Positions 4,903 through 49,392 of a stretch of DNA of 64,000 nt are shown in pieces. Made by a program: the position numbers and the translations under genes. How positions within the stretch are numbered: position 1 is the stretch's first letter; every line of letters begins with the position of its first letter. The notes beneath the pieces were generated by a model. The model saw only the letters and a program-made list of their open reading frames with translations. It was not told where the DNA came from and ran no database searches. The stretch lies in IMG/VR virus record IMGVR_UViG_3300036770_006296, positions 124,001 to 188,000 of that record; one strand, written 5' to 3'.

Positions 4903-5200
4903 CAAGAAATATAAAAAAATGGAATATAGAATCAAGAGTATCGAATACTTCGACGAACATGGAAAATCTAAATACTTAAATTACTTCATAGAGTATAGAG
5001 TGAAATTTTTATTCTTTTGGGAAAGATGGAAAGAGGTTACTCATTTAAGCTGCGGAATGTGTGATTGTCATAATGTAACAACATACTTTAATAGTTTAGA
5101 GGAAGCAGAAGAATTTGGTAAAAATCATTTGTGTAGTGGAAAAATTTATGACGGGCATGAGATTACCACTATTAAGACTTTAAGTTGTAAATCTGAATAG
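4895..5200 (+). CDS. Hypothetical protein
   Basis: Start moved to ATG 4895 overlapping the previous stop. Confidence 0.65.
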   Translation: MSNKKYKKMEYRIKSIEYFDEHGKSKYLNYFIEYRVKFLFFWERWKEVTHLSCGMCDCHNVTTYFNSLEEAEEFGKNHLCSGKIYDGHEITTIKTLSCKSE

Positions 5201-5201
5201 G

Positions 5202-5516
5202 ATGACTAAAAAGGAAATTGACTTGATAAAACTCAAAGCTCAGTACGAAGTTCTTTCCGAATTAGAAAGTGCATTTCCTGTATCTTCAAAACATGCAGTC
5301 TTCCTATTGATCCAGAAAAAAATGGACCAGCTGATCGCTATCATTGAATCTGATGAAAAAAATCAGAAGAATGAGTTTATTGGTAAATTCTTACAGAAAG
5401 CTATGAAAGATTATAATCTCTCGTATGGTTTACAATATTACAACCTTCTTGCTGAGAAGTCGGATCTTGCTGAAAAAGCCTGGACAAAACACAGAAAAAA
5501 ACAGGTGGTAAAATAG
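5202..5516 (+). CDS. Hypothetical protein
   Basis: 104-aa ORF coupled to previous gene. Confidence 0.7.
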   Translation: MTKKEIDLIKLKAQYEVLSELESAFPVSSKHAVFLLIQKKMDQLIAIIESDEKNQKNEFIGKFLQKAMKDYNLSYGLQYYNLLAEKSDLAEKAWTKHRKKQVVK

Positions 5517-5593
5517 AGAAAGTAAAACACGTTATCGTGGATGTGTGCTAACGTACTGAAACTTTTAATTACTTTTGTATATATAATAAAAAT

Positions 5594-6011
5594 GGGCCCG
5601 CTTTGGATTTGACAGGCGGAGGTAGTTCTTTGAAATGATGCAGGCAGGGTTAGATTGGAAATCCTTAATCACCTATCAAACAATAAACGCAAACGTTTAC
5701 AACGCAGAGGATATGATGAGTATCCCAACTTCTATTACTCGCGTAGCGGTAGCAGAAGAGGCTGAGTTGCTAATGGCAGCTTAACCGGCGGGCCGCACCG
5801 GCCTAGGAACAGAAAGGTGATGGTGGAGTCAGGTCTTACCTTAAAGACCGAAACGGAAATTCGGTTCATCCCGAAGAGTACACAGACCGAGCATTAAGTT
5901 TGTAATAAAAGAAATGCAAAAAAGTTTGTCCGTGTCGAATAACGGAATAAGCCTGTGAATGAGTTTCTTGAGCATTCGATCTGGACGAGGGTTCGACCCC
6001 CTCCGGGTCCA
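5594..6011 (+). ncRNA. ssrA: tmRNA
   Basis: 5' GGGCCCG pairs with 3' CGGGUCC-A (G3.U70 alanine identity); GGAUUUGAC 5' motif; T-arm GAGGG-TTCGACC-CCCTC; resume context AATAAAC-GCA; tag ORF 5689-5784 ANVYNAEDMMSIPTSITRVAVAEEAELLMAA*; CCA not encoded. Confidence 0.95.
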
Positions 6012-6029
6012 CTAGATTTAATCCCACTC

Positions 6030-6482
6030 TTATGGAGTGGGATTTTTTGTGGTTATTGATTTCAACATTTTTTGGTAATCTGGAGAAAGTAATGATGATC
6101 CCTCTATCAGAAACTCCATATAATCATTAGTAGGATTAAGCCCTTCAACTAGATAATCTTTCTGGGCTATGTATGTTATACATTCAATTTTTTTACCATC
6201 GGAGATAACATTAATCTTTTCCCTTCTGTAATGTAAAGGAGCACCCTCGAATTTATCTAGTTTTTCAAGGTGTGATTCACTTATATCAAATATTATCCCC
6301 TCTACTGTATCACCTTCGCTTTCTTCTATGTTTGCAAAAGACCAATCCCCTTTAGAGGATTTTTTATTAAATTTTAATACATAATTGTTAAGGATTCCGT
6401 GAGATCTAGAAAGAGGAGTTACCCCTCTTTTTATCATTCTAGAAACACTCATATTGGAACCGTATGCAAAGTATTTTACCAT
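6030..6482 (-). CDS. Gamma-glutamylcyclotransferase (GGCT/AIG2-like) family protein
   Basis: YFAYGSNM N-terminal motif; LDKFEG..HYRR catalytic-Glu region. Confidence 0.85.
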   Translation of the reverse strand: MVKYFAYGSNMSVSRMIKRGVTPLSRSHGILNNYVLKFNKKSSKGDWSFANIEESEGDTVEGIIFDISESHLEKLDKFEGAPLHYRREKINVISDGKKIECITYIAQKDYLVEGLNPTNDYMEFLIEGSSLLSPDYQKMLKSITTKNPTP

Positions 6483-6493
6483 TATAGATTAGA

Positions 6494-7060
6494 TCATAAT
6501 GATTTCAATCGATCTATTGGAAAATTATCAATAGAATATTTGGTAACTATAGCATGAGAGTTTGGTCCTCTTAGGTTCCGAGTTAAGTTGTTGTATGTGT
6601 CTGTTATATCGGTAGTTTTTGTAACAATCATACCAGCTTCCTGTGCTTTTTTCATTATGAAATGGCCATATATTCGGGATCTTCTATCGTCACCTTCAGA
6701 CTCTGACTTTGCAACAACTATAATGGAAATGAGATTGCCGCCTTTACTTCTTTCTTTAGCCCATTCTTTTACTGCCCACCATACACTCCCCATAACATCT
6801 TGCATATTATTTCTTCCTGTGAGATCGTCCGTATATTGATCTCCTGAGGTTTCTGCTTTAGATGAGAAATGTATTTCGAGTGTTACTGTGTTGTCCTCCC
6901 ATCTTCTAACTAGAATAAAAACACGGTATGGGTATCCGTCTATCTCAAATTCATATGTTATATCCTCATCCCTTGCAGGAATCTTGTTTATAACTTTGAT
7001 GTCTGGGATTGTGTCCCACATCTCATTAAGAAATTGACGGTATTTAAGTAAGGAACTCAT
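6494..7060 (-). CDS. Hypothetical protein, CTS-like N-terminus
   Basis: MSSLLKYRQFLNE; GGATATATA upstream; domain resembles C-terminal half of 14291-15232. Confidence 0.8.
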   Translation of the reverse strand: MSSLLKYRQFLNEMWDTIPDIKVINKIPARDEDITYEFEIDGYPYRVFILVRRWEDNTVTLEIHFSSKAETSGDQYTDDLTGRNNMQDVMGSVWWAVKEWAKERSKGGNLISIIVVAKSESEGDDRRSRIYGHFIMKKAQEAGMIVTKTTDITDTYNNLTRNLRGPNSHAIVTKYSIDNFPIDRLKSL

Positions 7061-7087: not shown

Positions 7088-7891
7088 TCATGATTTTTTA
7101 GAATACCTATTATTATAGTTTTGAGCGTACTTATCTAATTCTTTAGGATTAGATTTTAAATATTGTACCTCCTTAGATGTTAATGGATATATCTCCTTTA
7201 TTAATTCCCCCATTTTTTTAGTAAGAGCCGGGGTGAAATCTTTTTGTGTTCTATACGGAGAAAAATAATCTATGAATCCCAGTAATTTTGCGGGGTGTTC
7301 TTTAGGATCTGTAGAAATACTAGGATCTGATATTTTTCTAGTAAGTATGAAAGTTCCGTATCCTTCTCTTCCTCCGTCTAGAGGGTTTGTGTTTCCCTCT
7401 ATTCCTGTCCATGTTCCTGCTGATTTATCTACCGAAAGAACTATTCCAGTATGGCCCTTTCCTGGATATGCTCCTTTTTTATCTCTGCTTAGATAGCAAA
7501 AGACCATGCCTGGTAATATTTTATTTGCGTCCATTCCTTCTGTATAGACTAATTTTTTACCTTTGGTTGTTTCCCAGTGATATTTAACCGCTGCGCTGCT
7601 TGGTATTTTACTAAGATCCTCTGGTTTAAACTTTGTTTTAGATAGAGCACCTTTAACGAAGCCAACACACCAAGGATTTCCTGGGGTTACATTTACTCCT
7701 TTTAGTAGGGTTTCGACTTCTGGTCCCTTATTGCTTCCCCTCGGCTTTTCCTCTGCTATAGAAGATTTAATTGCAGAATAAAAACTATCTATTAGATTTT
7801 TATTTTCTTGTGAGGTGTTTACAGACTCTTGGAGACTACTTTTTTGTAGATCATTATTTTTAAAATTCTCGAAAAATAATATATGCTTCAT
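7088..7891 (-). CDS. CHAP-family peptidoglycan amidase/endopeptidase, CTS-like N-terminus
   Basis: SNKGPEV...PWCVGFV (Cys), GHTGIV (His), IEGNTN; MKHILFFENF. Confidence 0.8.
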   Translation of the reverse strand: MKHILFFENFKNNDLQKSSLQESVNTSQENKNLIDSFYSAIKSSIAEEKPRGSNKGPEVETLLKGVNVTPGNPWCVGFVKGALSKTKFKPEDLSKIPSSAAVKYHWETTKGKKLVYTEGMDANKILPGMVFCYLSRDKKGAYPGKGHTGIVLSVDKSAGTWTGIEGNTNPLDGGREGYGTFILTRKISDPSISTDPKEHPAKLLGFIDYFSPYRTQKDFTPALTKKMGELIKEIYPLTSKEVQYLKSNPKELDKYAQNYNNRYSKKS

Positions 7892-22222: not shown

Positions 22223-22348
22223 AGTCAGGTGGCGGAATTGGTAGACGCATAAATAAAGGTTAACAGTAAGGATAACGTAGAGTAACCTTGAAATACCCAT
22301 AAGTATAGCTCATAAGTTATCATACAGGTTCGAATCCTGTCCTGACTA
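22223..22348 (+). ncRNA. tRNA-like RNA with non-canonical, expanded central region
   Basis: Acceptor AGTCAGG/CCTGACT plus discriminator A; D-arm GCG-GAATTGGTAGA-CGC; T-arm ACAGG-TTCGAAT-CCTGT; 126 nt total with 75-nt centre. Confidence 0.75.
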
Positions 22349-24716: not shown

Positions 24717-25577
24717 ATGAGACAACTTAAGATCACATCGAGTATTACAAGTAGGGAAGATAAAGCTTTAGAAAAATATTTACAAGATATTTCAAAGGAG
24801 GAAATGATTACTGCCGACGAGGAAACACATTTAACCAGAAGAATAAAAGATGGGGACCAGGAGGCTTTAGATAAAATGGTTAGAGCAAACTTAAGATTCG
24901 TTGTGTCAGTTGCCAAGCAATATCAACATCAAGGTCTTCCCCTGGTTGATCTAATAAACGAGGGAAATGTTGGACTGATAAAAGCTGCTAAAAAATTCGA
25001 TGAGACAAGGGGATTTAAGTTTATATCGTATGCTGTTTGGTGGATTAGACAAGCAATAATGGAAGCTCTTTCAGAGAAAGCGAGAGTTATAAGAATACCT
25101 TTAAATCAAGTTGGTGTTTTAAGTAAAATAAACAAGGCATATGCTAGATTAGAGCAGGATCTAGGTAGAGCTCCATCCTCTGAAGAGATAGCAGATGAAC
25201 TGGATCTCCCAGAACAGAAAGTCAAAGACACTTTAAGCAGTTCGAGAAATCATGTATCCTACGACGCTCCAATGGGGGGTGACCAAGAAAACTCCTCAAT
25301 GATAGAAGTACTAAGCAACGATTTCCCCTCAACAGATTCTATAATGATAGAGGAATCCTTAAGGGTTGATATTGAAAGAAGTCTCTCCGCCTTAGATCCT
25401 AAATGTAGAGAGATAATAAAATTAAACTACGGAATAGGATACACACATCCTAAATCATTAGATGAGATTGGTGAAAAATACTCTCTGACTAAGGAAAGAG
25501 TAAGACAGATTAGAGAAAAGGGTCTTAGAAAGCTAAGGGTTGAATCTAGAAGCAAAACACTAAAACAATATCTCTAG
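24717..25577 (+). CDS. rpoD: RNA polymerase sigma-70 factor, Bacteroidota primary-sigma type
   Basis: MRQLKITSSIT.RE..LEKYLQDI; NLRFVVSVAKQY; DLINEGNVGL; KFISYAVWWIRQ; LTKERVRQIREK; no region 1.1. Confidence 0.95.
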   Translation: MRQLKITSSITSREDKALEKYLQDISKEEMITADEETHLTRRIKDGDQEALDKMVRANLRFVVSVAKQYQHQGLPLVDLINEGNVGLIKAAKKFDETRGFKFISYAVWWIRQAIMEALSEKARVIRIPLNQVGVLSKINKAYARLEQDLGRAPSSEEIADELDLPEQKVKDTLSSSRNHVSYDAPMGGDQENSSMIEVLSNDFPSTDSIMIEESLRVDIERSLSALDPKCREIIKLNYGIGYTHPKSLDEIGEKYSLTKERVRQIREKGLRKLRVESRSKTLKQYL

Positions 25578-33051: not shown

Positions 33052-33783
33052 ATGAAGCATCTTAAAAGTATAGATGAATTTAAAATAGCAAATGAACAGC
33101 TTTTTTCTGACGCTAATAAATTTTCTAAGCTCTTCGGATTAGATTCACCATCTAAAGACTCAAGTGATAATAAAGATTCATCTTCAGGAGGGACAGATTC
33201 TTCTGGAGCATCCTCATCAATTTCTGCCAAAACAGAACTTGGTAATTATGGTAAATTTAGTGAAGCATCTAAGAAAAATGCTCCTCTAATTATGGTTTAT
33301 GGAGGTATAGATGTAGGAGGCAAAAAGAGTGGAGAATATATGTATGACTATTTAGGAAAAATAGGAAGCTCCGCTAATATTTTTGTGGCAAAGGATCACA
33401 AAGTAGATGGCAAAGGATCATACAAAGCAGTCAAAGATAAATTGTCTGAAAAATCGATATCGCCTTCTAAAAAAATATTATATCTTTTTTCTGGAGGATA
33501 TAAACCAGGAATGGAATTATTAAATAGTGTTTCGGCTTCAGAGTTCGACTTAATATATCTAGTTGATATTTGGATGGGTAATTCAAAAGTTGCTTCCTTT
33601 TATAAAAATTTAGCAGAGAATAATAGAGGTAAGGTTAGGTATTTTTATAGCGGAGACGGAGCTCAAAATGCAGATGCAAAAAACAGTTTAATTAAAACTC
33701 TGAACTTCTACAAGTCAAATGATCAAAACAATCATATGGCAACAAACACAGATGCCGTCTCTGATCTATCAAATAAATTATAA
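33052..33783 (+). CDS. NEQLF-module protein 2, alpha/beta-hydrolase-like C-terminal domain
   Basis: MKHLKSIDEFKIANEQLFSDANKFSKLFG; Ser linker; LYLFSGG, IYLVD, late His; an in-frame ATG at 32974 would add a 26-aa TM leader. Confidence 0.7.
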   Translation: MKHLKSIDEFKIANEQLFSDANKFSKLFGLDSPSKDSSDNKDSSSGGTDSSGASSSISAKTELGNYGKFSEASKKNAPLIMVYGGIDVGGKKSGEYMYDYLGKIGSSANIFVAKDHKVDGKGSYKAVKDKLSEKSISPSKKILYLFSGGYKPGMELLNSVSASEFDLIYLVDIWMGNSKVASFYKNLAENNRGKVRYFYSGDGAQNADAKNSLIKTLNFYKSNDQNNHMATNTDAVSDLSNKL

Positions 33784-33784
33784 A

Positions 33785-34561
33785 ATGAAACACATAAAGA
33801 ACATACAAGAATTTAATCACCTTTATGAACAGTTATTTGCTGCTGATATTGCAAAATTTAACAAATTGATGGGTATATCAGTGGAAGAAACCGGTATGGA
33901 GGAACCAAATATATCTCCTGCTGAAAATCCTTCTGGTTCAGGGTCAGCCTTTGCTTCTGTTGTTAAACTTAACACCAGTCAGTTAGATGAATATGGATCA
34001 ACTGTTGGGATTAGTGAAAAAGGAGATAATGCTCCATTACAGCAGCCAGCAAGAGGGCCTTTAGGAAATATAGTAAATTCAGCTTATGCTAACTTAAATG
34101 TTTCAACTAGAAAAATACCAGGGACTCTCGGAGGTAATTTAGGTTGTGCAGCAGCAGTTTCCATTATATTTTATAGAGCTACTGGATACGCAATAGCTGG
34201 TTCTGGAGCTATCACACTAGGCACCGCTCACATGTGGAACCATTTTGAAAAAGAAAGCAGAAATCCCAGCGGAGTTTGGCAGAAAATAACTAATTGGAAG
34301 ACTGACTCACAGCCTGGAGATATAATATTAACATCTAGAGGGTCTAAAGCAGGACACGTGGGTGTTGTTGTAGAGGGAGGTAACATTATATCAAATTCTT
34401 CTGGAGGATTCCAAGGAGATAAAAAAGGACAGATCGAGCTAAACTATAATCTAAACACATGGCAAAGTGTTGCTAATAGAAATCCACAGCAAACTGCTTC
34501 TTTTAGATATAAAGGACCCTATAAAAACACCTGGGGTAAAACGGAAAAACCAGTAGCATAG
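33785..34561 (+). CDS. NEQLF-module protein 3, NlpC/P60-like papain-fold domain
   Basis: Start moved to 33785 (MKHIKNIQEFNHLYEQLF); GGNLGCAAAVS (Cys), QPGDIIL, GHVGVV (His), ISNSS. Confidence 0.75.
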   Translation: MKHIKNIQEFNHLYEQLFAADIAKFNKLMGISVEETGMEEPNISPAENPSGSGSAFASVVKLNTSQLDEYGSTVGISEKGDNAPLQQPARGPLGNIVNSAYANLNVSTRKIPGTLGGNLGCAAAVSIIFYRATGYAIAGSGAITLGTAHMWNHFEKESRNPSGVWQKITNWKTDSQPGDIILTSRGSKAGHVGVVVEGGNIISNSSGGFQGDKKGQIELNYNLNTWQSVANRNPQQTASFRYKGPYKNTWGKTEKPVA

Positions 34562-36370: not shown

Positions 36371-36943
36371 ATGGCAGACACAATTAACTTACCAAACCCT
36401 AAAGAAAGAAACCTTTTCTTTGACAAACAGGTCTCACAAAGTTCTGTAAATACCCTTTCGAAAGATATCATAGAAATTAACGAGCATGACGAATACATTA
36501 AAAAAATCTATGATGCTCACGACTTAAACTATACTCCTAAACCAATTAAGATCTATATCGATTCTTATGGAGGATATGTTTACCAGTGTCTAGGTTTAGT
36601 TGGTATAATGAGATCCTCTAAAACTCCTATTCATACAATAGTTACTGGGTGTGCAATGTCTTCGGGATTTTTGATAGCTATATCGGGACACAAAAGATTT
36701 GGACATCTTAGATCTACATATTTATATCACCAAGTTGCAGGAGGTGCTTTTGGAAAGGTGAAGGACATGGAAGAAGAACTTGCTGAGATTTTAAGATTAC
36801 AGCAAGCAGTGGAGGAGATAACACTAGAAAGTACTGCTATAACAAAAAAGATGCTAGAGAAAGCATATAGAGGGAAAAAAGACTGGTATATTACATCAGA
36901 ACAAGCAATTAAATTAAAAATAATAGATGAAATAATATCTTAA
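36371..36943 (+). CDS. clpP: ClpP-family protease proteolytic subunit
   Basis: IKIYIDSYGG; GCAMSSG (Ser); YLYHQ (His); KDWY..EQA...IIDEI. Confidence 0.9.
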   Translation: MADTINLPNPKERNLFFDKQVSQSSVNTLSKDIIEINEHDEYIKKIYDAHDLNYTPKPIKIYIDSYGGYVYQCLGLVGIMRSSKTPIHTIVTGCAMSSGFLIAISGHKRFGHLRSTYLYHQVAGGAFGKVKDMEEELAEILRLQQAVEEITLESTAITKKMLEKAYRGKKDWYITSEQAIKLKIIDEIIS

Positions 36944-40937: not shown

Positions 40938-41750
40938 ATGATACTTAAATTAGGCTCCAAAGGTACAGCGGTAGAAAAACTACAGAATTTTTTAGGTGTA
41001 CCGATCAATGGAAATTTCGACGAAAGCGTAGATAAAGCTTTAAAAACTTGGCAAAAATCAAACGGATTAAAAGATGATGGTATAGCAGGACCAATCACTC
41101 TTAAAAAAATGGGTATAATCCTAGAATCCGATATCCCTGTTCCTACTTCTTCTTTTAAACTTGATAAGTTAAAAGGACATATTCCCGATTCTGTTATAGC
41201 TCAAATACCAGATACCGCAGCTAAATTTGGAATAACAAACGTGCTTAGACTTTCGCATTTTCTTGCACAGTGTGGGCACGAGTCTGGAGGTTTTAAGGCA
41301 GTATCAGAAAATCTTAACTATTCAGCCGATGGTTTAAAAAAGATATTTGGAAAATATTTCCCTGGTAATCTTAATGAGTCATATGCTAGACAACCAGAAA
41401 AAATTGCTGCTAGAGTTTACGGAAGTAGAATGGGAAATGGCGATGAAGCTTCCAAAGACGGATGGAAATTTAGAGGAAGAGGATACATCCAATTAACAGG
41501 AAAATCTAATTACGAAGCATTCGACAAATTTGTAGATGATGACATATTAGGTAATCCAGATTTAGTTGCAACCAAATACCCTCTAATGTCAGCAGCTTGG
41601 TTTTTCAATAAAAATGGTCTATGGACTATTTGTGATAAGGGCGCGGATGATGCAACGGTTACTGCTGTTACAAAAAGAGTAAACGGAGGAACTATAGGAT
41701 TATCTGATAGGATTAAACATTTTAAAGAGTATTATTCTTTGCTTAAATAA
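40938..41750 (+). CDS. Endolysin: PG-binding domain plus GH19 (chitinase-like lysozyme) domain
   Basis: LKLGSKG.AV..LQ...WQK.NGL..DGIAGP.T; HFLAQCGHESG; FRGRGYIQLTGKSNY; VTKRVNGG; behind GGATATATA. Confidence 0.9.
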   Translation: MILKLGSKGTAVEKLQNFLGVPINGNFDESVDKALKTWQKSNGLKDDGIAGPITLKKMGIILESDIPVPTSSFKLDKLKGHIPDSVIAQIPDTAAKFGITNVLRLSHFLAQCGHESGGFKAVSENLNYSADGLKKIFGKYFPGNLNESYARQPEKIAARVYGSRMGNGDEASKDGWKFRGRGYIQLTGKSNYEAFDKFVDDDILGNPDLVATKYPLMSAAWFFNKNGLWTICDKGADDATVTAVTKRVNGGTIGLSDRIKHFKEYYSLLK

Positions 41751-48510: not shown

Positions 48511-49392
48511 ATGCGGGATTTTAAAATAATTAACCGGATAACAAATACCTCTGATAATCTAAACCGATACTTCAATGAAATATCAAAATATGAATTATTA
48601 AGTGCTGAGAAAGAGGCTGAACTTGCTTTTAAAGCTAAGGCTGGTGACGAAAAAGCTAAAGAAGCAATATTAAAATCTAATCTAAGATTTGTTATTTCTG
48701 TTGCAAAATCGTATGTTTCTGGCAACTCCCCACTGGAAGATCTTATATCTGAAGGAAACAAAGGATTAGTAGAAGCAGTCGAAAATTTCGATCCGACTAC
48801 CGGATTCAAATTTATTAGTTATGCTGTTTGGCATATTAGGAAAAACATACTTGTATATCTTAATAATCACACAAGATCCATAAGAATCCCTTCTAACGTA
48901 AATAATGAGATGCGAAAATATCATGCTATAGAGGAATCTTTTATCTCTTATAATGGTAGGGAACCTTCAATAGATGAGATGCTAGAGATAATAGAAAATC
49001 CTGAATATGGGATCCAGATTTCTAACGCCACAATAGATACAATTAAAAACACCCCGTTATCTATTCCTCTCGAAAATTACGGAAAAGAAAATGACGAGAT
49101 TGGCTCTCCTCTAAGTTGGTTGCAATCATCTGAAAATAGTGATGGTATAACATTGAGTGACGATATCAGGAATATTATCTTGCGAGTTCTTTCAGAGTTA
49201 AAGCCTATGGAAAGGGAAGTTACTATTTTAAAATACGGACTTGGAGACTCAAAAGAACCTATGAGCTATAAAGCTATAGGGGAGAAGCTAGAAAAAACAA
49301 CAGAATGGGCTAGGATTATTTCTAAGAAAGCTGAAATGAGGATGAAGGCTATTATTAGGAGAAGAAAAATAAAAGAATTATTCTTCGATTAA
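48511..49392 (+). CDS. Second, divergent sigma-70 family factor
   Basis: NLRFVISVAKSY; DLISEGNKGL; FKFISYAVWHIRK; region 4 TTEWARII. Confidence 0.9.
   Translation: MRDFKIINRITNTSDNLNRYFNEISKYELLSAEKEAELAFKAKAGDEKAKEAILKSNLRFVISVAKSYVSGNSPLEDLISEGNKGLVEAVENFDPTTGFKFISYAVWHIRKNILVYLNNHTRSIRIPSNVNNEMRKYHAIEESFISYNGREPSIDEMLEIIENPEYGIQISNATIDTIKNTPLSIPLENYGKENDEIGSPLSWLQSSENSDGITLSDDIRNIILRVLSELKPMEREVTILKYGLGDSKEPMSYKAIGEKLEKTTEWARIISKKAEMRMKAIIRRRKIKELFFD

What the first reader, a model, noticed from the sequence alone, without database searches (positions are those of the whole stretch)
5594..6011. Phage tmRNA with an exceptionally long (31-codon) tag
Seen: intact tRNA-Ala-like domain and tag ANVYNAEDMMSIPTSITRVAVAEEAELLMAA. 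Established: bacterial tags are usually about 10 aa ending in AA and are read by ClpXP/ClpAP. Inference: the extended tag may add an adaptor or phage-protease recognition site, or alter the fate of rescued proteins during infection.
Basis: partly seen in the sequence, partly recalled or inferred. Interest (0 to 1): 0.62.

Follow-up and report, generated by a model that had tools for sequence, protein, structure and literature searches.

The report
Phage tmRNA with conserved long tag
A large freshwater phage carries its own ribosome-rescue RNA (tmRNA), and its unusually long 31-codon tag has an 11-residue core that is kept almost unchanged at the protein level in about 70 otherwise unrelated phage contigs, so these phages appear to mark unfinished proteins with a signal of their own.

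Summary
ARAGORN and Rfam (85 bits, E 1.6e-31) find a one-piece tmRNA at 5594-6012/6014, with an alanine-type acceptor stem and a 31-codon frame (5689-5781, stop at 5782-5784). It lies in an ORFan-rich fragment of a large phage, not at a prophage or host junction.

New result: it belongs to a phage tmRNA family found in about 70 IMG/VR contigs and in the published 735-kb phage. All have tags of about 26-35 codons sharing the core ED(M/I)MSIPTS(I/L)T. The core is encoded by different synonymous codons, including both Ser and both Arg codon families, and length differences are in frame. The long frame is therefore under peptide-level selection. This argues against the 9-codon tag that ARAGORN calls in several homologs.

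Contigs from four metatranscriptome studies cover only the tmRNA and not its flanks. None of ten phage records encodes SmpB, so host SmpB must serve. The motif was not found in 802 sampled bacterial genomes.

31 codons lies within the published range of 8-35 and is normal for this family and for other phage tmRNA families. It is long, but not exceptional among phages.

What recognises the core is unknown. A protease or adaptor handle is my inference.

The parts
5594..6012 (+). One-piece tmRNA gene (Rfam extends it to 6014)
   Evidence: ARAGORN; RF00023 85 bits, E 1.6e-31; RNA-library contigs cover 5607-6006 only
5594..5600 (+). 5' strand of the acceptor stem, with G3 at 5596
   Evidence: Pairs 7/7 with 6004-6010. 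49 of 50 family members keep 7/7 pairing and G3:U70 through 12 or more compensatory stem variants
5646..5677 (+). Pseudoknot 1 (stem 1: 5646-5651 with 5660-5665; stem 2: 5653-5658 with 5672-5677)
   Evidence: Rfam alignment. Stem 1 shows compensatory changes among homologs, read from the alignment
5678..5688 (+). 11-nt spacer with the conserved box ACAAUAAA(C/U); U at -5 and A at -4 of the resume codon
   Evidence: The box directly precedes the first tag codon in both subfamilies. It corresponds to E. coli U85/A86, which set the frame (PMC2481249)
5689..5784 (+). Tag reading frame: 31 sense codons (5689-5781) plus TAA
   Evidence: The frame is kept open, with in-frame length changes only, in all homologs
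5707..5739 (+). Conserved core of the tag, ED(M/I)MSIPTS(I/L)T (codons 7-17)
   Evidence: In 49 distinct tags E, D, M, S, I and T are invariant, and P, S and T are at 90% or more. Synonymous codon turnover, including Ser AGT versus TCT/TCC
5709..5725 (+). Small hairpin inside the core-coding stretch (5709-5714 pairs with 5720-5725)
   Evidence: Pairing kept in 8 of 8 distinct subfamily-A and 15 of 15 subfamily-B sequences. One covarying pair (A-T in 11, G-C in 4, never mismatched)
5755..5757 (+). Alternative resume codon (GAA) that ARAGORN prefers in several homologs. Same frame, 22 codons downstream. Rejected here
   Evidence: Peptide-level conservation lies upstream of it
6020..6054 (+). Intrinsic-terminator-like hairpin (11 pairs) plus T-run, 6 nt after the tmRNA
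36371..36943 (+). Phage ClpP-like protease gene. This is context only; its link to the tmRNA is unproven
   Evidence: PF00574 86.8 bits. Ser/His/Asp align with solved ClpP. ClpP sits next to the tmRNA in a relative

Best explanation
This is a functional, expressed, phage-encoded one-piece tmRNA. It is charged with alanine (G3:U70) and must use the host's SmpB, EF-Tu, AlaRS and CCA-adding enzyme. It enters stalled ribosomes during infection, and translation resumes at GCA 5689. That appends Ala plus 31 residues to the unfinished protein and releases the ribosome at TAA 5782. The RNA belongs to a large phage-specific family. In that family the tag has a short variable start, an almost invariant core ED(M/I)MSIPTS(I/L)T, an acidic stretch, and a hydrophobic C-terminus. 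Shown here: the gene, its anatomy, its presence as a discrete RNA in lake and river metatranscriptomes, family membership, peptide-level selection on the core, and absence of SmpB from the phages. Inferred: the core is a handle for a conserved protein, either a protease, an unfoldase or an adaptor, of host or phage origin. Together with the hydrophobic end it would decide the fate of phage-tagged proteins. The whole element would be part of the phage's translation-support kit, since in relatives it sits among tRNA genes.
For: Gene and anatomy.
Phage context: ORFan-rich flanks on both sides, a Dda-like helicase, two sigma factors, lysins and ClpP. The record is a 31%-complete virus record. Relatives are complete genomes of 250-365 kb, two with terminal repeats.
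Family.
Peptide-level selection: 44 distinct 36-mers use GAG/GAA, GAT/GAC, AGT/TCT/TCC, four Pro codons, four Thr codons, four Ser codons, seven Ile/Leu codons, and Arg CGC/CGT/AGA/AGG. Tag lengths differ only by whole codons. L009 has an in-frame stop three codons before the resume codon.
Position of the resume codon: 11 nt after PK1, behind a box conserved in both subfamilies.
Expression: in four RNA runs from four studies, contigs cover 5607-6006 only. One 367-nt contig has no differences, and one insert is bounded by adaptors on both sides.
Host dependence: SmpB found in 0 of 10 records, six of them at least 90% complete.
Phage specificity: the tag profile scores 49-59 bits in phage records but at most 19 bits in 802 bacterial genomes. 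A scan of 185,579 species genomes with the exact-codon pattern gave 16 hits, about the ~17 I calculate for chance, and none lies in a tmRNA.
Link to proteolysis: ClpP in 6 of 10 records, and directly upstream of the tmRNA in a relative.
Against: No tagged peptide, aminoacylation or ribosome entry has been observed. The RNA evidence comes from assembled contigs, which cannot show RNA ends or abundance. No binding partner was found, and ClpP is missing from 4 of 10 records. A small hairpin overlaps the start of the core, so part of the nucleotide conservation there is at the RNA level. C-termini vary within the family (AA, LV, VA, LA), so a single ClpX-type end is not conserved. The host is unknown. 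Only Bacteroidota and Bacillota were sampled with the codon-independent profile. Two of the searches that built the family required the core motif, so its invariance is partly due to ascertainment. However, eight members found through other parts of the RNA also carry it.
Confidence: 0.6

Rival explanations
1. Short tag. Translation resumes at GAA 5755 and adds only nine residues, as ARAGORN calls it in L003, L009, L016-L018, L022, L032 and L038. The 66 nt before it would be an untranslated spacer.
For: ARAGORN's own calls in homologs. The internal site also has U at -5 and A at -4 in the window.
Against: The supposed spacer shows amino-acid conservation with synonymous turnover, and only in-frame indels. 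Subfamily B has its resume codon directly before the core. Rfam places the resume codon at 5689, 11 nt after PK1 as in E. coli.
Confidence: 0.05
2. The element is not phage-owned. It is the host's ssrA at the edge of an integrated prophage, or bacterial DNA binned as viral.
For: ssrA is a classic integration site (my own knowledge). L008, found through the shared T-arm, looks like such a case, with a 9-residue Bacteroidota-type tag.
Against: Both flanks are ORFan-rich phage-like genes with uniform G+C of about 34%. The same tmRNA lies inside complete 250-365 kb phage genomes. It was not found in the bacterial genomes searched.
Confidence: 0.03
3. RNA-level constraint only. The frame is translated, but the conserved stretch is kept for an RNA hairpin or RNA-protein contact in the tmRNA. 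The peptide would be a generic long degron with no specific partner.
For: The hairpin is kept in 23 of 23 distinct sequences, with one covarying pair.
Against: The hairpin covers only codons E-D-x-M-S(-I) and changes register between subfamilies. The residues P-T-S-(I/L)-T-(R/K) beyond it are conserved through many synonymous codons.
Confidence: 0.15
4. Decoy or hijack. The main role of the phage tmRNA is to compete with host tmRNA for SmpB and stalled ribosomes, so that host tagging is replaced or blocked. The tag's fate would be secondary. For example, tagged proteins could be spared, sequestered, or used as a signal of host state.
For: No phage SmpB. A TLD-only phage tmRNA (DS6A) and SmpB titration are discussed in PMC4131195. 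Family C-termini are often not of the LAA type.
Against: A pure decoy needs no conserved reading frame, yet the frame and the core are under peptide-level selection.
Confidence: 0.12

Closest known systems
Canonical bacterial one-piece tmRNA (SsrA, Rfam RF00023; E. coli tag ANDENYALAA)
   Same: tRNA-Ala-like domain with G3:U70. PK1 followed by U(-5)A(-4) and a GCA resume codon. An internal frame with no start signal that ends in a hydrophobic ..AA. Full-length Rfam match.
   Different: The tag is about three times longer and has a conserved internal core not seen in the bacteria sampled. The score is only 85 bits, against 135-225 bits for five bacterial tmRNAs. The genome carrying it has no SmpB. 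CCA is not encoded.
[quoted passage not shown]
   Same: A long tag in which determinants inside the tag, not only the last residues, are thought to matter. The C-terminus departs from strict ALAA in many family members.
   Different: I saw no sequence resemblance, though I made no formal comparison. The carrier is a phage, not a reduced bacterium. No Lon gene in five phage records. The protease is unknown.
Known phage-borne tmRNAs: Bxz1-type mycobacteriophages, Bacillus phage G, and huge phages (PMC4131195; PMC7162821)
   Same: A tmRNA carried by a large phage alongside other translation genes. The 735-kb phage of PMC7162821 carries a member of this very family.
   Different: There is no nucleotide match to any GenBank phage. 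Those papers list tmRNAs but do not analyse tags. The copy in the 735-kb phage is split by a group I intron, and ARAGORN misses it. Some huge phages carry SmpB; these ten records do not.
SspB-ClpXP bipartite recognition of the E. coli ssrA tag
   Same: This is the logic I infer: one part of the tag binds an adaptor and the C-terminus binds the unfoldase.
   Different: No SspB homolog in five phage records. The core is unrelated to AANDENY. Binding has not been tested.

Membership tests
tmRNA (Rfam RF00023, one-piece) | Covariance-model match above the curated threshold over the full model | tested here: met
   85 bits against a gathering score of 47, E 1.6e-31, model positions 1-374
tmRNA (Rfam RF00023, one-piece) | tRNA-Ala-like domain: 7-bp acceptor stem with G3:U70, discriminator A, T-arm, no anticodon arm | tested here: met
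   5594-5600 pairs with 6004-6010, including G5596:T6008; A6011; T-arm 5987-6003. 49 of 50 family members keep this through compensatory changes
tmRNA (Rfam RF00023, one-piece) | PK1 shortly upstream of a resume codon, preceded by conserved U(-5)A(-4) | tested here: met
   PK1 5646-5677, 11-nt spacer, GCA 5689. Box conserved in both subfamilies. Rule taken from PMC2481249
tmRNA (Rfam RF00023, one-piece) | Internal frame with no start signal, ending in a stop codon, that encodes a tag with a hydrophobic C-terminus | tested here: met
   5689-5784, ending ..LLMAA
tmRNA (Rfam RF00023, one-piece) | Downstream pseudoknots PK2-PK4 | tested here: inconclusive
   Rfam aligns this region with low posterior probability. 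It varies greatly in length and sequence among homologs
tmRNA (Rfam RF00023, one-piece) | Made as a stable RNA | tested here: met
   In four RNA libraries from four studies, contigs cover 5607-6006 and not the flanks. Caveat: contigs cannot show RNA ends or levels
tmRNA (Rfam RF00023, one-piece) | Alanylation, SmpB and EF-Tu binding, and tagging of stalled-ribosome products | not testable with these tools
   Needs biochemistry or mass spectrometry
Self-contained phage trans-translation module (tmRNA plus SmpB, as reported for some huge phages) | SmpB encoded by the same genome | tested here: not met
   PF01668 found in 0 of 10 phage records, six of them at least 90% complete. The search found SmpB in 10 of 14 control genomes, all ten bacterial ones
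E. coli-type ClpXP/SspB ssrA degron | C-terminal LAA-COOH, with an SspB site near the start of the tag | tested here: inconclusive
   The window ends in MAA. Family ends vary (LAA, VAA, ELV, EVA, ILA). No SspB in the phage records. The host's factors are unknown
Mycoplasma-type Lon-directed extended tag | A long tag read by Lon in a cell that lacks ClpXP | not tested
   Only the length is shared. No Lon_C in five phage records. The host's proteases are unknown

The most novel reading that the evidence does not exclude
The core ED(M/I)MSIPTS(I/L)T is a phage-specific address label. Large freshwater phages would replace the host's short ssrA degron with their own tag, and a dedicated and still unidentified reader would send rescued proteins to a phage-chosen fate. 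The fate could be fast recycling into amino acids or removal of products of abortive-infection nucleases. This would be a second, virus-owned trans-translation code.
Probability: 0.3. Interest if true: 0.85.

Novelty: new variant of a known kind. Interest (0 to 1): 0.68.

Why it matters
tmRNA tags are usually treated as short, lineage-specific degrons, and phage tmRNAs as curiosities copied from hosts. Here a tag core is conserved at the protein level across phages that share no neighbouring genes, from a roughly 280-kb lake phage (size estimated from CheckV completeness) to the 735-kb record holder. It was not found in the bacteria sampled. That points to a specific, conserved reader of phage-tagged proteins and gives a concrete peptide to use as bait. 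It also bears on why large phages invest in ribosome rescue, for example against defences that cut mRNA or tRNA. There are practical lessons too. ARAGORN gives inconsistent tag calls within this one family. It also misses the intron-containing members and those with a divergent T-loop, so surveys of phage tmRNAs undercount them and mis-size their tags.

Tried and rejected
- Nucleotide search against 50,697 GenBank phages found no match. A tblastn with the tag found only the 735-kb phage, at a weak E-value; inspecting that locus confirmed the match.
- Conserved neighbours as partner candidates: the window's flanking ORFs are shared only with L002, which is essentially the same phage. Subfamily B has its own synteny, but none of those genes has a Pfam family.
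- Phage ClpP as an obligatory partner was rejected. It is in 5 of the first 5 records but only 1 of 5 further ones. It does lie directly upstream of the tmRNA in one relative.
- Lon_C and SspB were not found in five records.
- Host assignment from a Bacteroidota-type TAnnTTTG promoter box failed. The box occurs upstream of the window's gene only, in 1 of 37 distinct upstream regions.
- The simple scan found no sigma-70-type promoter.
- The GTTCTTT(R)A box is not enriched in the window, with 3 matches against 2.9 expected.
- The exact-codon scan of genome contigs gave only chance-level hits.
- The protein word search returned only 31 clusters of small 'hypothetical proteins', which are mis-called ORFs lying over family tmRNAs in metagenomes.
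- I did not run complex prediction, because there is no defensible candidate partner.
- I did not run the large representative-protein search, because a 31-residue query could not reach significance there.
No alternative genetic code was used.

Full report
OBSERVATION. Rfam's tmRNA model matches 5594-6014 over its whole length at 85 bits against a threshold of 47, E 1.6e-31. It aligns the consensus resume codon to GCA at 5689 with the highest posterior probability.

The following can be read from the sequence. The acceptor stem 5594-5600 pairs 7/7 with 6004-6010 and contains G5596:T6008, the G3:U70 pair that specifies alanine. A6011 is the discriminator. CCA is not encoded. The T-arm is 5987-6003. 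Pseudoknot 1 spans 5646-5677. An 11-nt spacer follows, then the frame 5689-5781 and TAA at 5782-5784. A strong terminator-like hairpin with a T-run starts at 6020.

IS IT THE PHAGE'S OWN GENE? The window is part of an 85,958-bp IMG/VR virus record that CheckV rates 31% complete. From that I estimate a genome of about 280 kb. G+C is an even 31-37% on both sides of the gene. The 20 ORFs flanking the tmRNA are almost all without Pfam or PHROG matches. The exceptions are an AIG2/GGACT-like protein, a CHAP domain and a P-loop NTPase. Further along the window lie a Dda-like helicase, two sigma factors, a thymidylate synthase, lysins, phosphoesterases and a ClpP-like protease. Homologous tmRNAs sit inside phage genomes of 250-365 kb that are rated 92-100% complete, two of them with terminal repeats. 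The rival 'host ssrA at a prophage end' is therefore very unlikely.

A FAMILY, NOT A SINGLETON. Scans of IMG/VR with short exact patterns from the T-arm, the 5' tRNA-like half and the resume region found close homologs. L002 is essentially the same phage, on a 206-kb contig, and has an identical tag. The others share the same frame of 29-32 codons.

A pattern from the middle of the tag found 30 stretches of viral DNA. A pattern degenerate at synonymous positions found 66. Every one except a single chance hit (L043) lies in a short open frame in tmRNA context. In total about 70 contigs carry the family, with 50 distinct tag variants.

Two subfamilies appear. In subfamily A, which includes the window, a five-residue prefix follows the resume codon, and then comes the core. 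In subfamily B the core starts at the second codon. Both have the same box, ACAAUAAA(C/U), directly before the first codon.

In the alignment of 49 tags, E, D, M, S, I and T of the core ED(M/I)MSIPTS(I/L)T are invariant. P, S, T and a later E are at 90% or more. The only GenBank phage with the motif is the 735-kb genome of Al-Shayeb et al..

WHERE DOES TRANSLATION RESUME? In eight homologs (L003, L009, L016, L017, L018, L022, L032, L038) ARAGORN itself calls a 9-codon tag that starts 22 codons downstream in the same frame. That corresponds to GAA 5755 in the window. Five lines of evidence favour the long frame.

1. Rfam aligns the resume codon at 5689.
2. That codon lies 11 nt after PK1 and has U at -5 and A at -4, as in E. 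coli, where U85 and A86 set the frame (PMC2481249).
3. The same upstream box precedes the first codon in both subfamilies, whereas the internal site has no counterpart in subfamily B.
4. All length differences among tags are whole codons, giving frames of about 26-35 codons. L009 has an in-frame stop three codons before the resume codon, which bounds the start.
5. The codons upstream of the alternative start are conserved as amino acids while their nucleotides vary. This is the decisive point. Among 44 distinct 36-mers, Glu uses GAG 27 times and GAA 17 times. Asp uses GAT 25 and GAC 19. The first Ser uses AGT 22, TCT 17 and TCC 5. Pro, the first Thr and the second Ser each use four codons. The Ile/Leu position uses seven codons. 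The last Thr uses three. Arg uses CGC, CGT, AGA and AGG.

Two of the scans required the core, which inflates its apparent invariance. However, the eight members found through other parts of the RNA all carry it, with single P-to-Q and P-to-L exceptions. The positions outside the search pattern show the same behaviour.

AN RNA LAYER AS WELL. The first codons of the core can also form a small hairpin. In the window 5709-5714 pairs with 5720-5725. Pairing holds in all 8 distinct subfamily-A sequences. In all 15 distinct subfamily-B sequences a shifted hairpin is kept. There the third base of the Glu codon and the third base of the Ser codon covary (A-T in 11, G-C in 4, never a mismatch). Part of the nucleotide conservation is therefore structural. 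The residues beyond the hairpin are still conserved through synonymous change, so RNA structure alone does not explain the core.

EXPRESSION. DNA nearly identical to 5000-7000 occurs in freshwater and subsurface metagenomes from at least seven studies. Six metatranscriptome runs hold 13-16% of its sampled words, roughly the tmRNA's 21% share of that stretch. I laid four of these runs, from four studies of lake, river and other aquatic water, on 5000-7000. Their contigs cover only 5607-6006. Nothing lies on 5000-5602 or beyond 6071, and only a trace of depth lies just past 6004. One 367-nt contig matches 5620-5986 with no differences. One matches 5649-5966 with none. One 424-nt contig is the insert 5607-5985 with sequencing adaptors on both sides. 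Contaminating DNA would cover the flanks equally, so this is good evidence for a discrete, abundant RNA. Contigs cannot give RNA ends or levels. Other contigs in the same runs match only the tag region and then diverge, which indicates that relatives are transcribed too.

PARTNERS. SmpB was found in none of ten phage records, six of them at least 90% complete. The same search found it in 10 of 14 control genomes, which are the ten bacteria among them. The phage RNA must therefore use host SmpB. This is an inference.

Lon_C and SspB were absent from the five records searched. A ClpP-family protein is present in the window (36371-36943; 86.8 bits), and its Ser, His and Asp align with solved ClpP structures. 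ClpP occurs in all five subfamily-A records first tested, but in only one of five further records. In one relative, a ClpP gene lies 78 nt upstream of the tmRNA on two of four contigs. ClpP is thus a recurrent neighbour but not an obligatory one.

Around the tmRNA, no gene is shared between the window and other family members apart from L002. The RNA and its tag are therefore far better conserved than their surroundings.

IS THE CORE A HOST FEATURE? The tag profile scores 49-59 bits in five phage records. In 401 Bacteroidota genomes the best score was 19 bits, which is chance level and not in a tmRNA. In 401 Bacillota genomes nothing reached E 1e-4. The subfamily-A nucleotide pattern gave 16 hits across 185,579 species genomes. 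I calculate about 17 expected by chance for a pattern of 18 specified bases in 596 Gb on both strands. None of the hits lies in a tmRNA. Six bacterial tmRNAs used as controls have tags of 9-12 residues. Other phyla could not be sampled, so the proper statement is 'not found in those searched'. The host is unknown. Al-Shayeb et al. predicted Bacteroidetes as the host of the 735-kb member (PMC7162821).

HOW UNUSUAL IS THE LENGTH? Reviews give 8-35 residues as the known range and about 10 as usual (PMC3968760, PMC8012679). Thirty-one is near the top of that range but inside it. Within this family, 26-35 is the rule. A scan with a conserved helix-2 segment also brought up other phage tmRNA families with tags of 24-29 residues. 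Several of them share an ED-x-MS-(F/I) element with the present core. Long tags are thus a recurring trait of phage tmRNAs. The window's tag is not an outlier among them.

MECHANISM AND ITS LIMITS. Shown: the gene, its anatomy, its RNA, its family, and selection on the peptide. Inferred from established knowledge of trans-translation: charging with Ala, delivery with host SmpB and EF-Tu, template switch at 5689, and release at 5782. Hypothesis: the core is a binding site for a conserved reader, either a protease, an unfoldase or an adaptor, that acts together with the hydrophobic C-terminus. This would parallel the split of the E. coli tag between SspB and ClpX, and the multi-part tags of Mycoplasma read by Lon (PMC3985003). 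Because C-termini vary across the family while the core does not, the core may be the main determinant. I found no paper describing this family or its motif, but the library searched is incomplete.

VERDICT. The finding is real and more interesting than a single long tag. It is a new variant of a known kind: a phage tmRNA family defined by a conserved extended tag. Its anatomy and expression are well supported. Its reader is unknown.

Noticed in passing
L105 1747-1978 (LR756501, the 735-kb phage) and L021 7609-7837 (- strand): In two family members a group I intron (RF00028, 96-98 bits) splits the tmRNA gene inside the T-loop. ARAGORN finds no tmRNA in either, so ARAGORN-based surveys miss these copies, including the one in the largest published phage genome.
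   Followed up: partly
window 22223-22348 (+): Rfam tRNA match at 40.6 bits. ARAGORN in intron mode calls it tRNA-Met(CAT) with a 55-nt insert in the anticodon loop. That is too short for a group I intron, and its nature is unknown.
   Followed up: partly
L125, L130, L133, L135, L141, L146, L151, L154, L158, L188, L193; also L126, L143, L149, L168: Other phage tmRNA families have long tags of 23-29 residues. One large group ends in ..FEDAMSF(V/I)GADYAVAA and shares an ED-x-MS-(F/I) element with the core described here. This hints at a wider superfamily of phage tags.
   Followed up: partly
Upstream of the tmRNA in L030, L036, L039, L042, L045 and most subfamily-B loci; inside the gene at window 5625-5633: A box GTTCTTT(A/G)A lies about 7-12 nt before the mature 5' end in at least 15 of 37 distinct upstream regions, plus L036 and L039. 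In many subfamily-A members the same box lies inside the tmRNA, about 30 nt from its 5' end. It may be a promoter or processing signal. It is not enriched in the window (3 matches against 2.9 expected).
   Followed up: partly
L036 and L039: These carry family tmRNAs with frames of about 35 codons and a good acceptor stem. Their T-loop is divergent (AGTCGGA in place of TTCGAnn), and both ARAGORN and Rfam's gathering threshold miss them.
   Followed up: partly
window 36371-36943 (+); L241 48-776: The phage has a ClpP-like protease with the Ser/His/Asp triad aligned. In the window it sits next to a Dda-like helicase rather than among head genes. In a relative, a ClpP gene sits 78 nt upstream of the tmRNA.
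   Followed up: partly
window 24717-25577 and 48511-49392 (+): Two phage sigma-factor genes (phrog_351, E 6e-70 and 1e-47), which suggests phage-directed promoter use.
   Followed up: no
window 6030-6482 (-): A gamma-glutamyl cyclotransferase-like (AIG2/GGACT) gene converges on the 3' end of the tmRNA. Two CHAP-domain proteins (7088-7891 on the - strand, 33719-34561 on the + strand) and a GH19/PG-binding lysin (40938-41750) are also present.
   Followed up: no
P0001-P0031: Public gene calls annotate 31 clusters of 36-69-residue 'hypothetical proteins' that are in fact read across the PK1-tag region of family tmRNAs.
   Followed up: partly
window -12400 to 0 (record bases 73498-85958, outside the window): The stretch of the record beyond the window's left edge has noticeably sparser and shorter ORFs than the window itself.
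   Followed up: no
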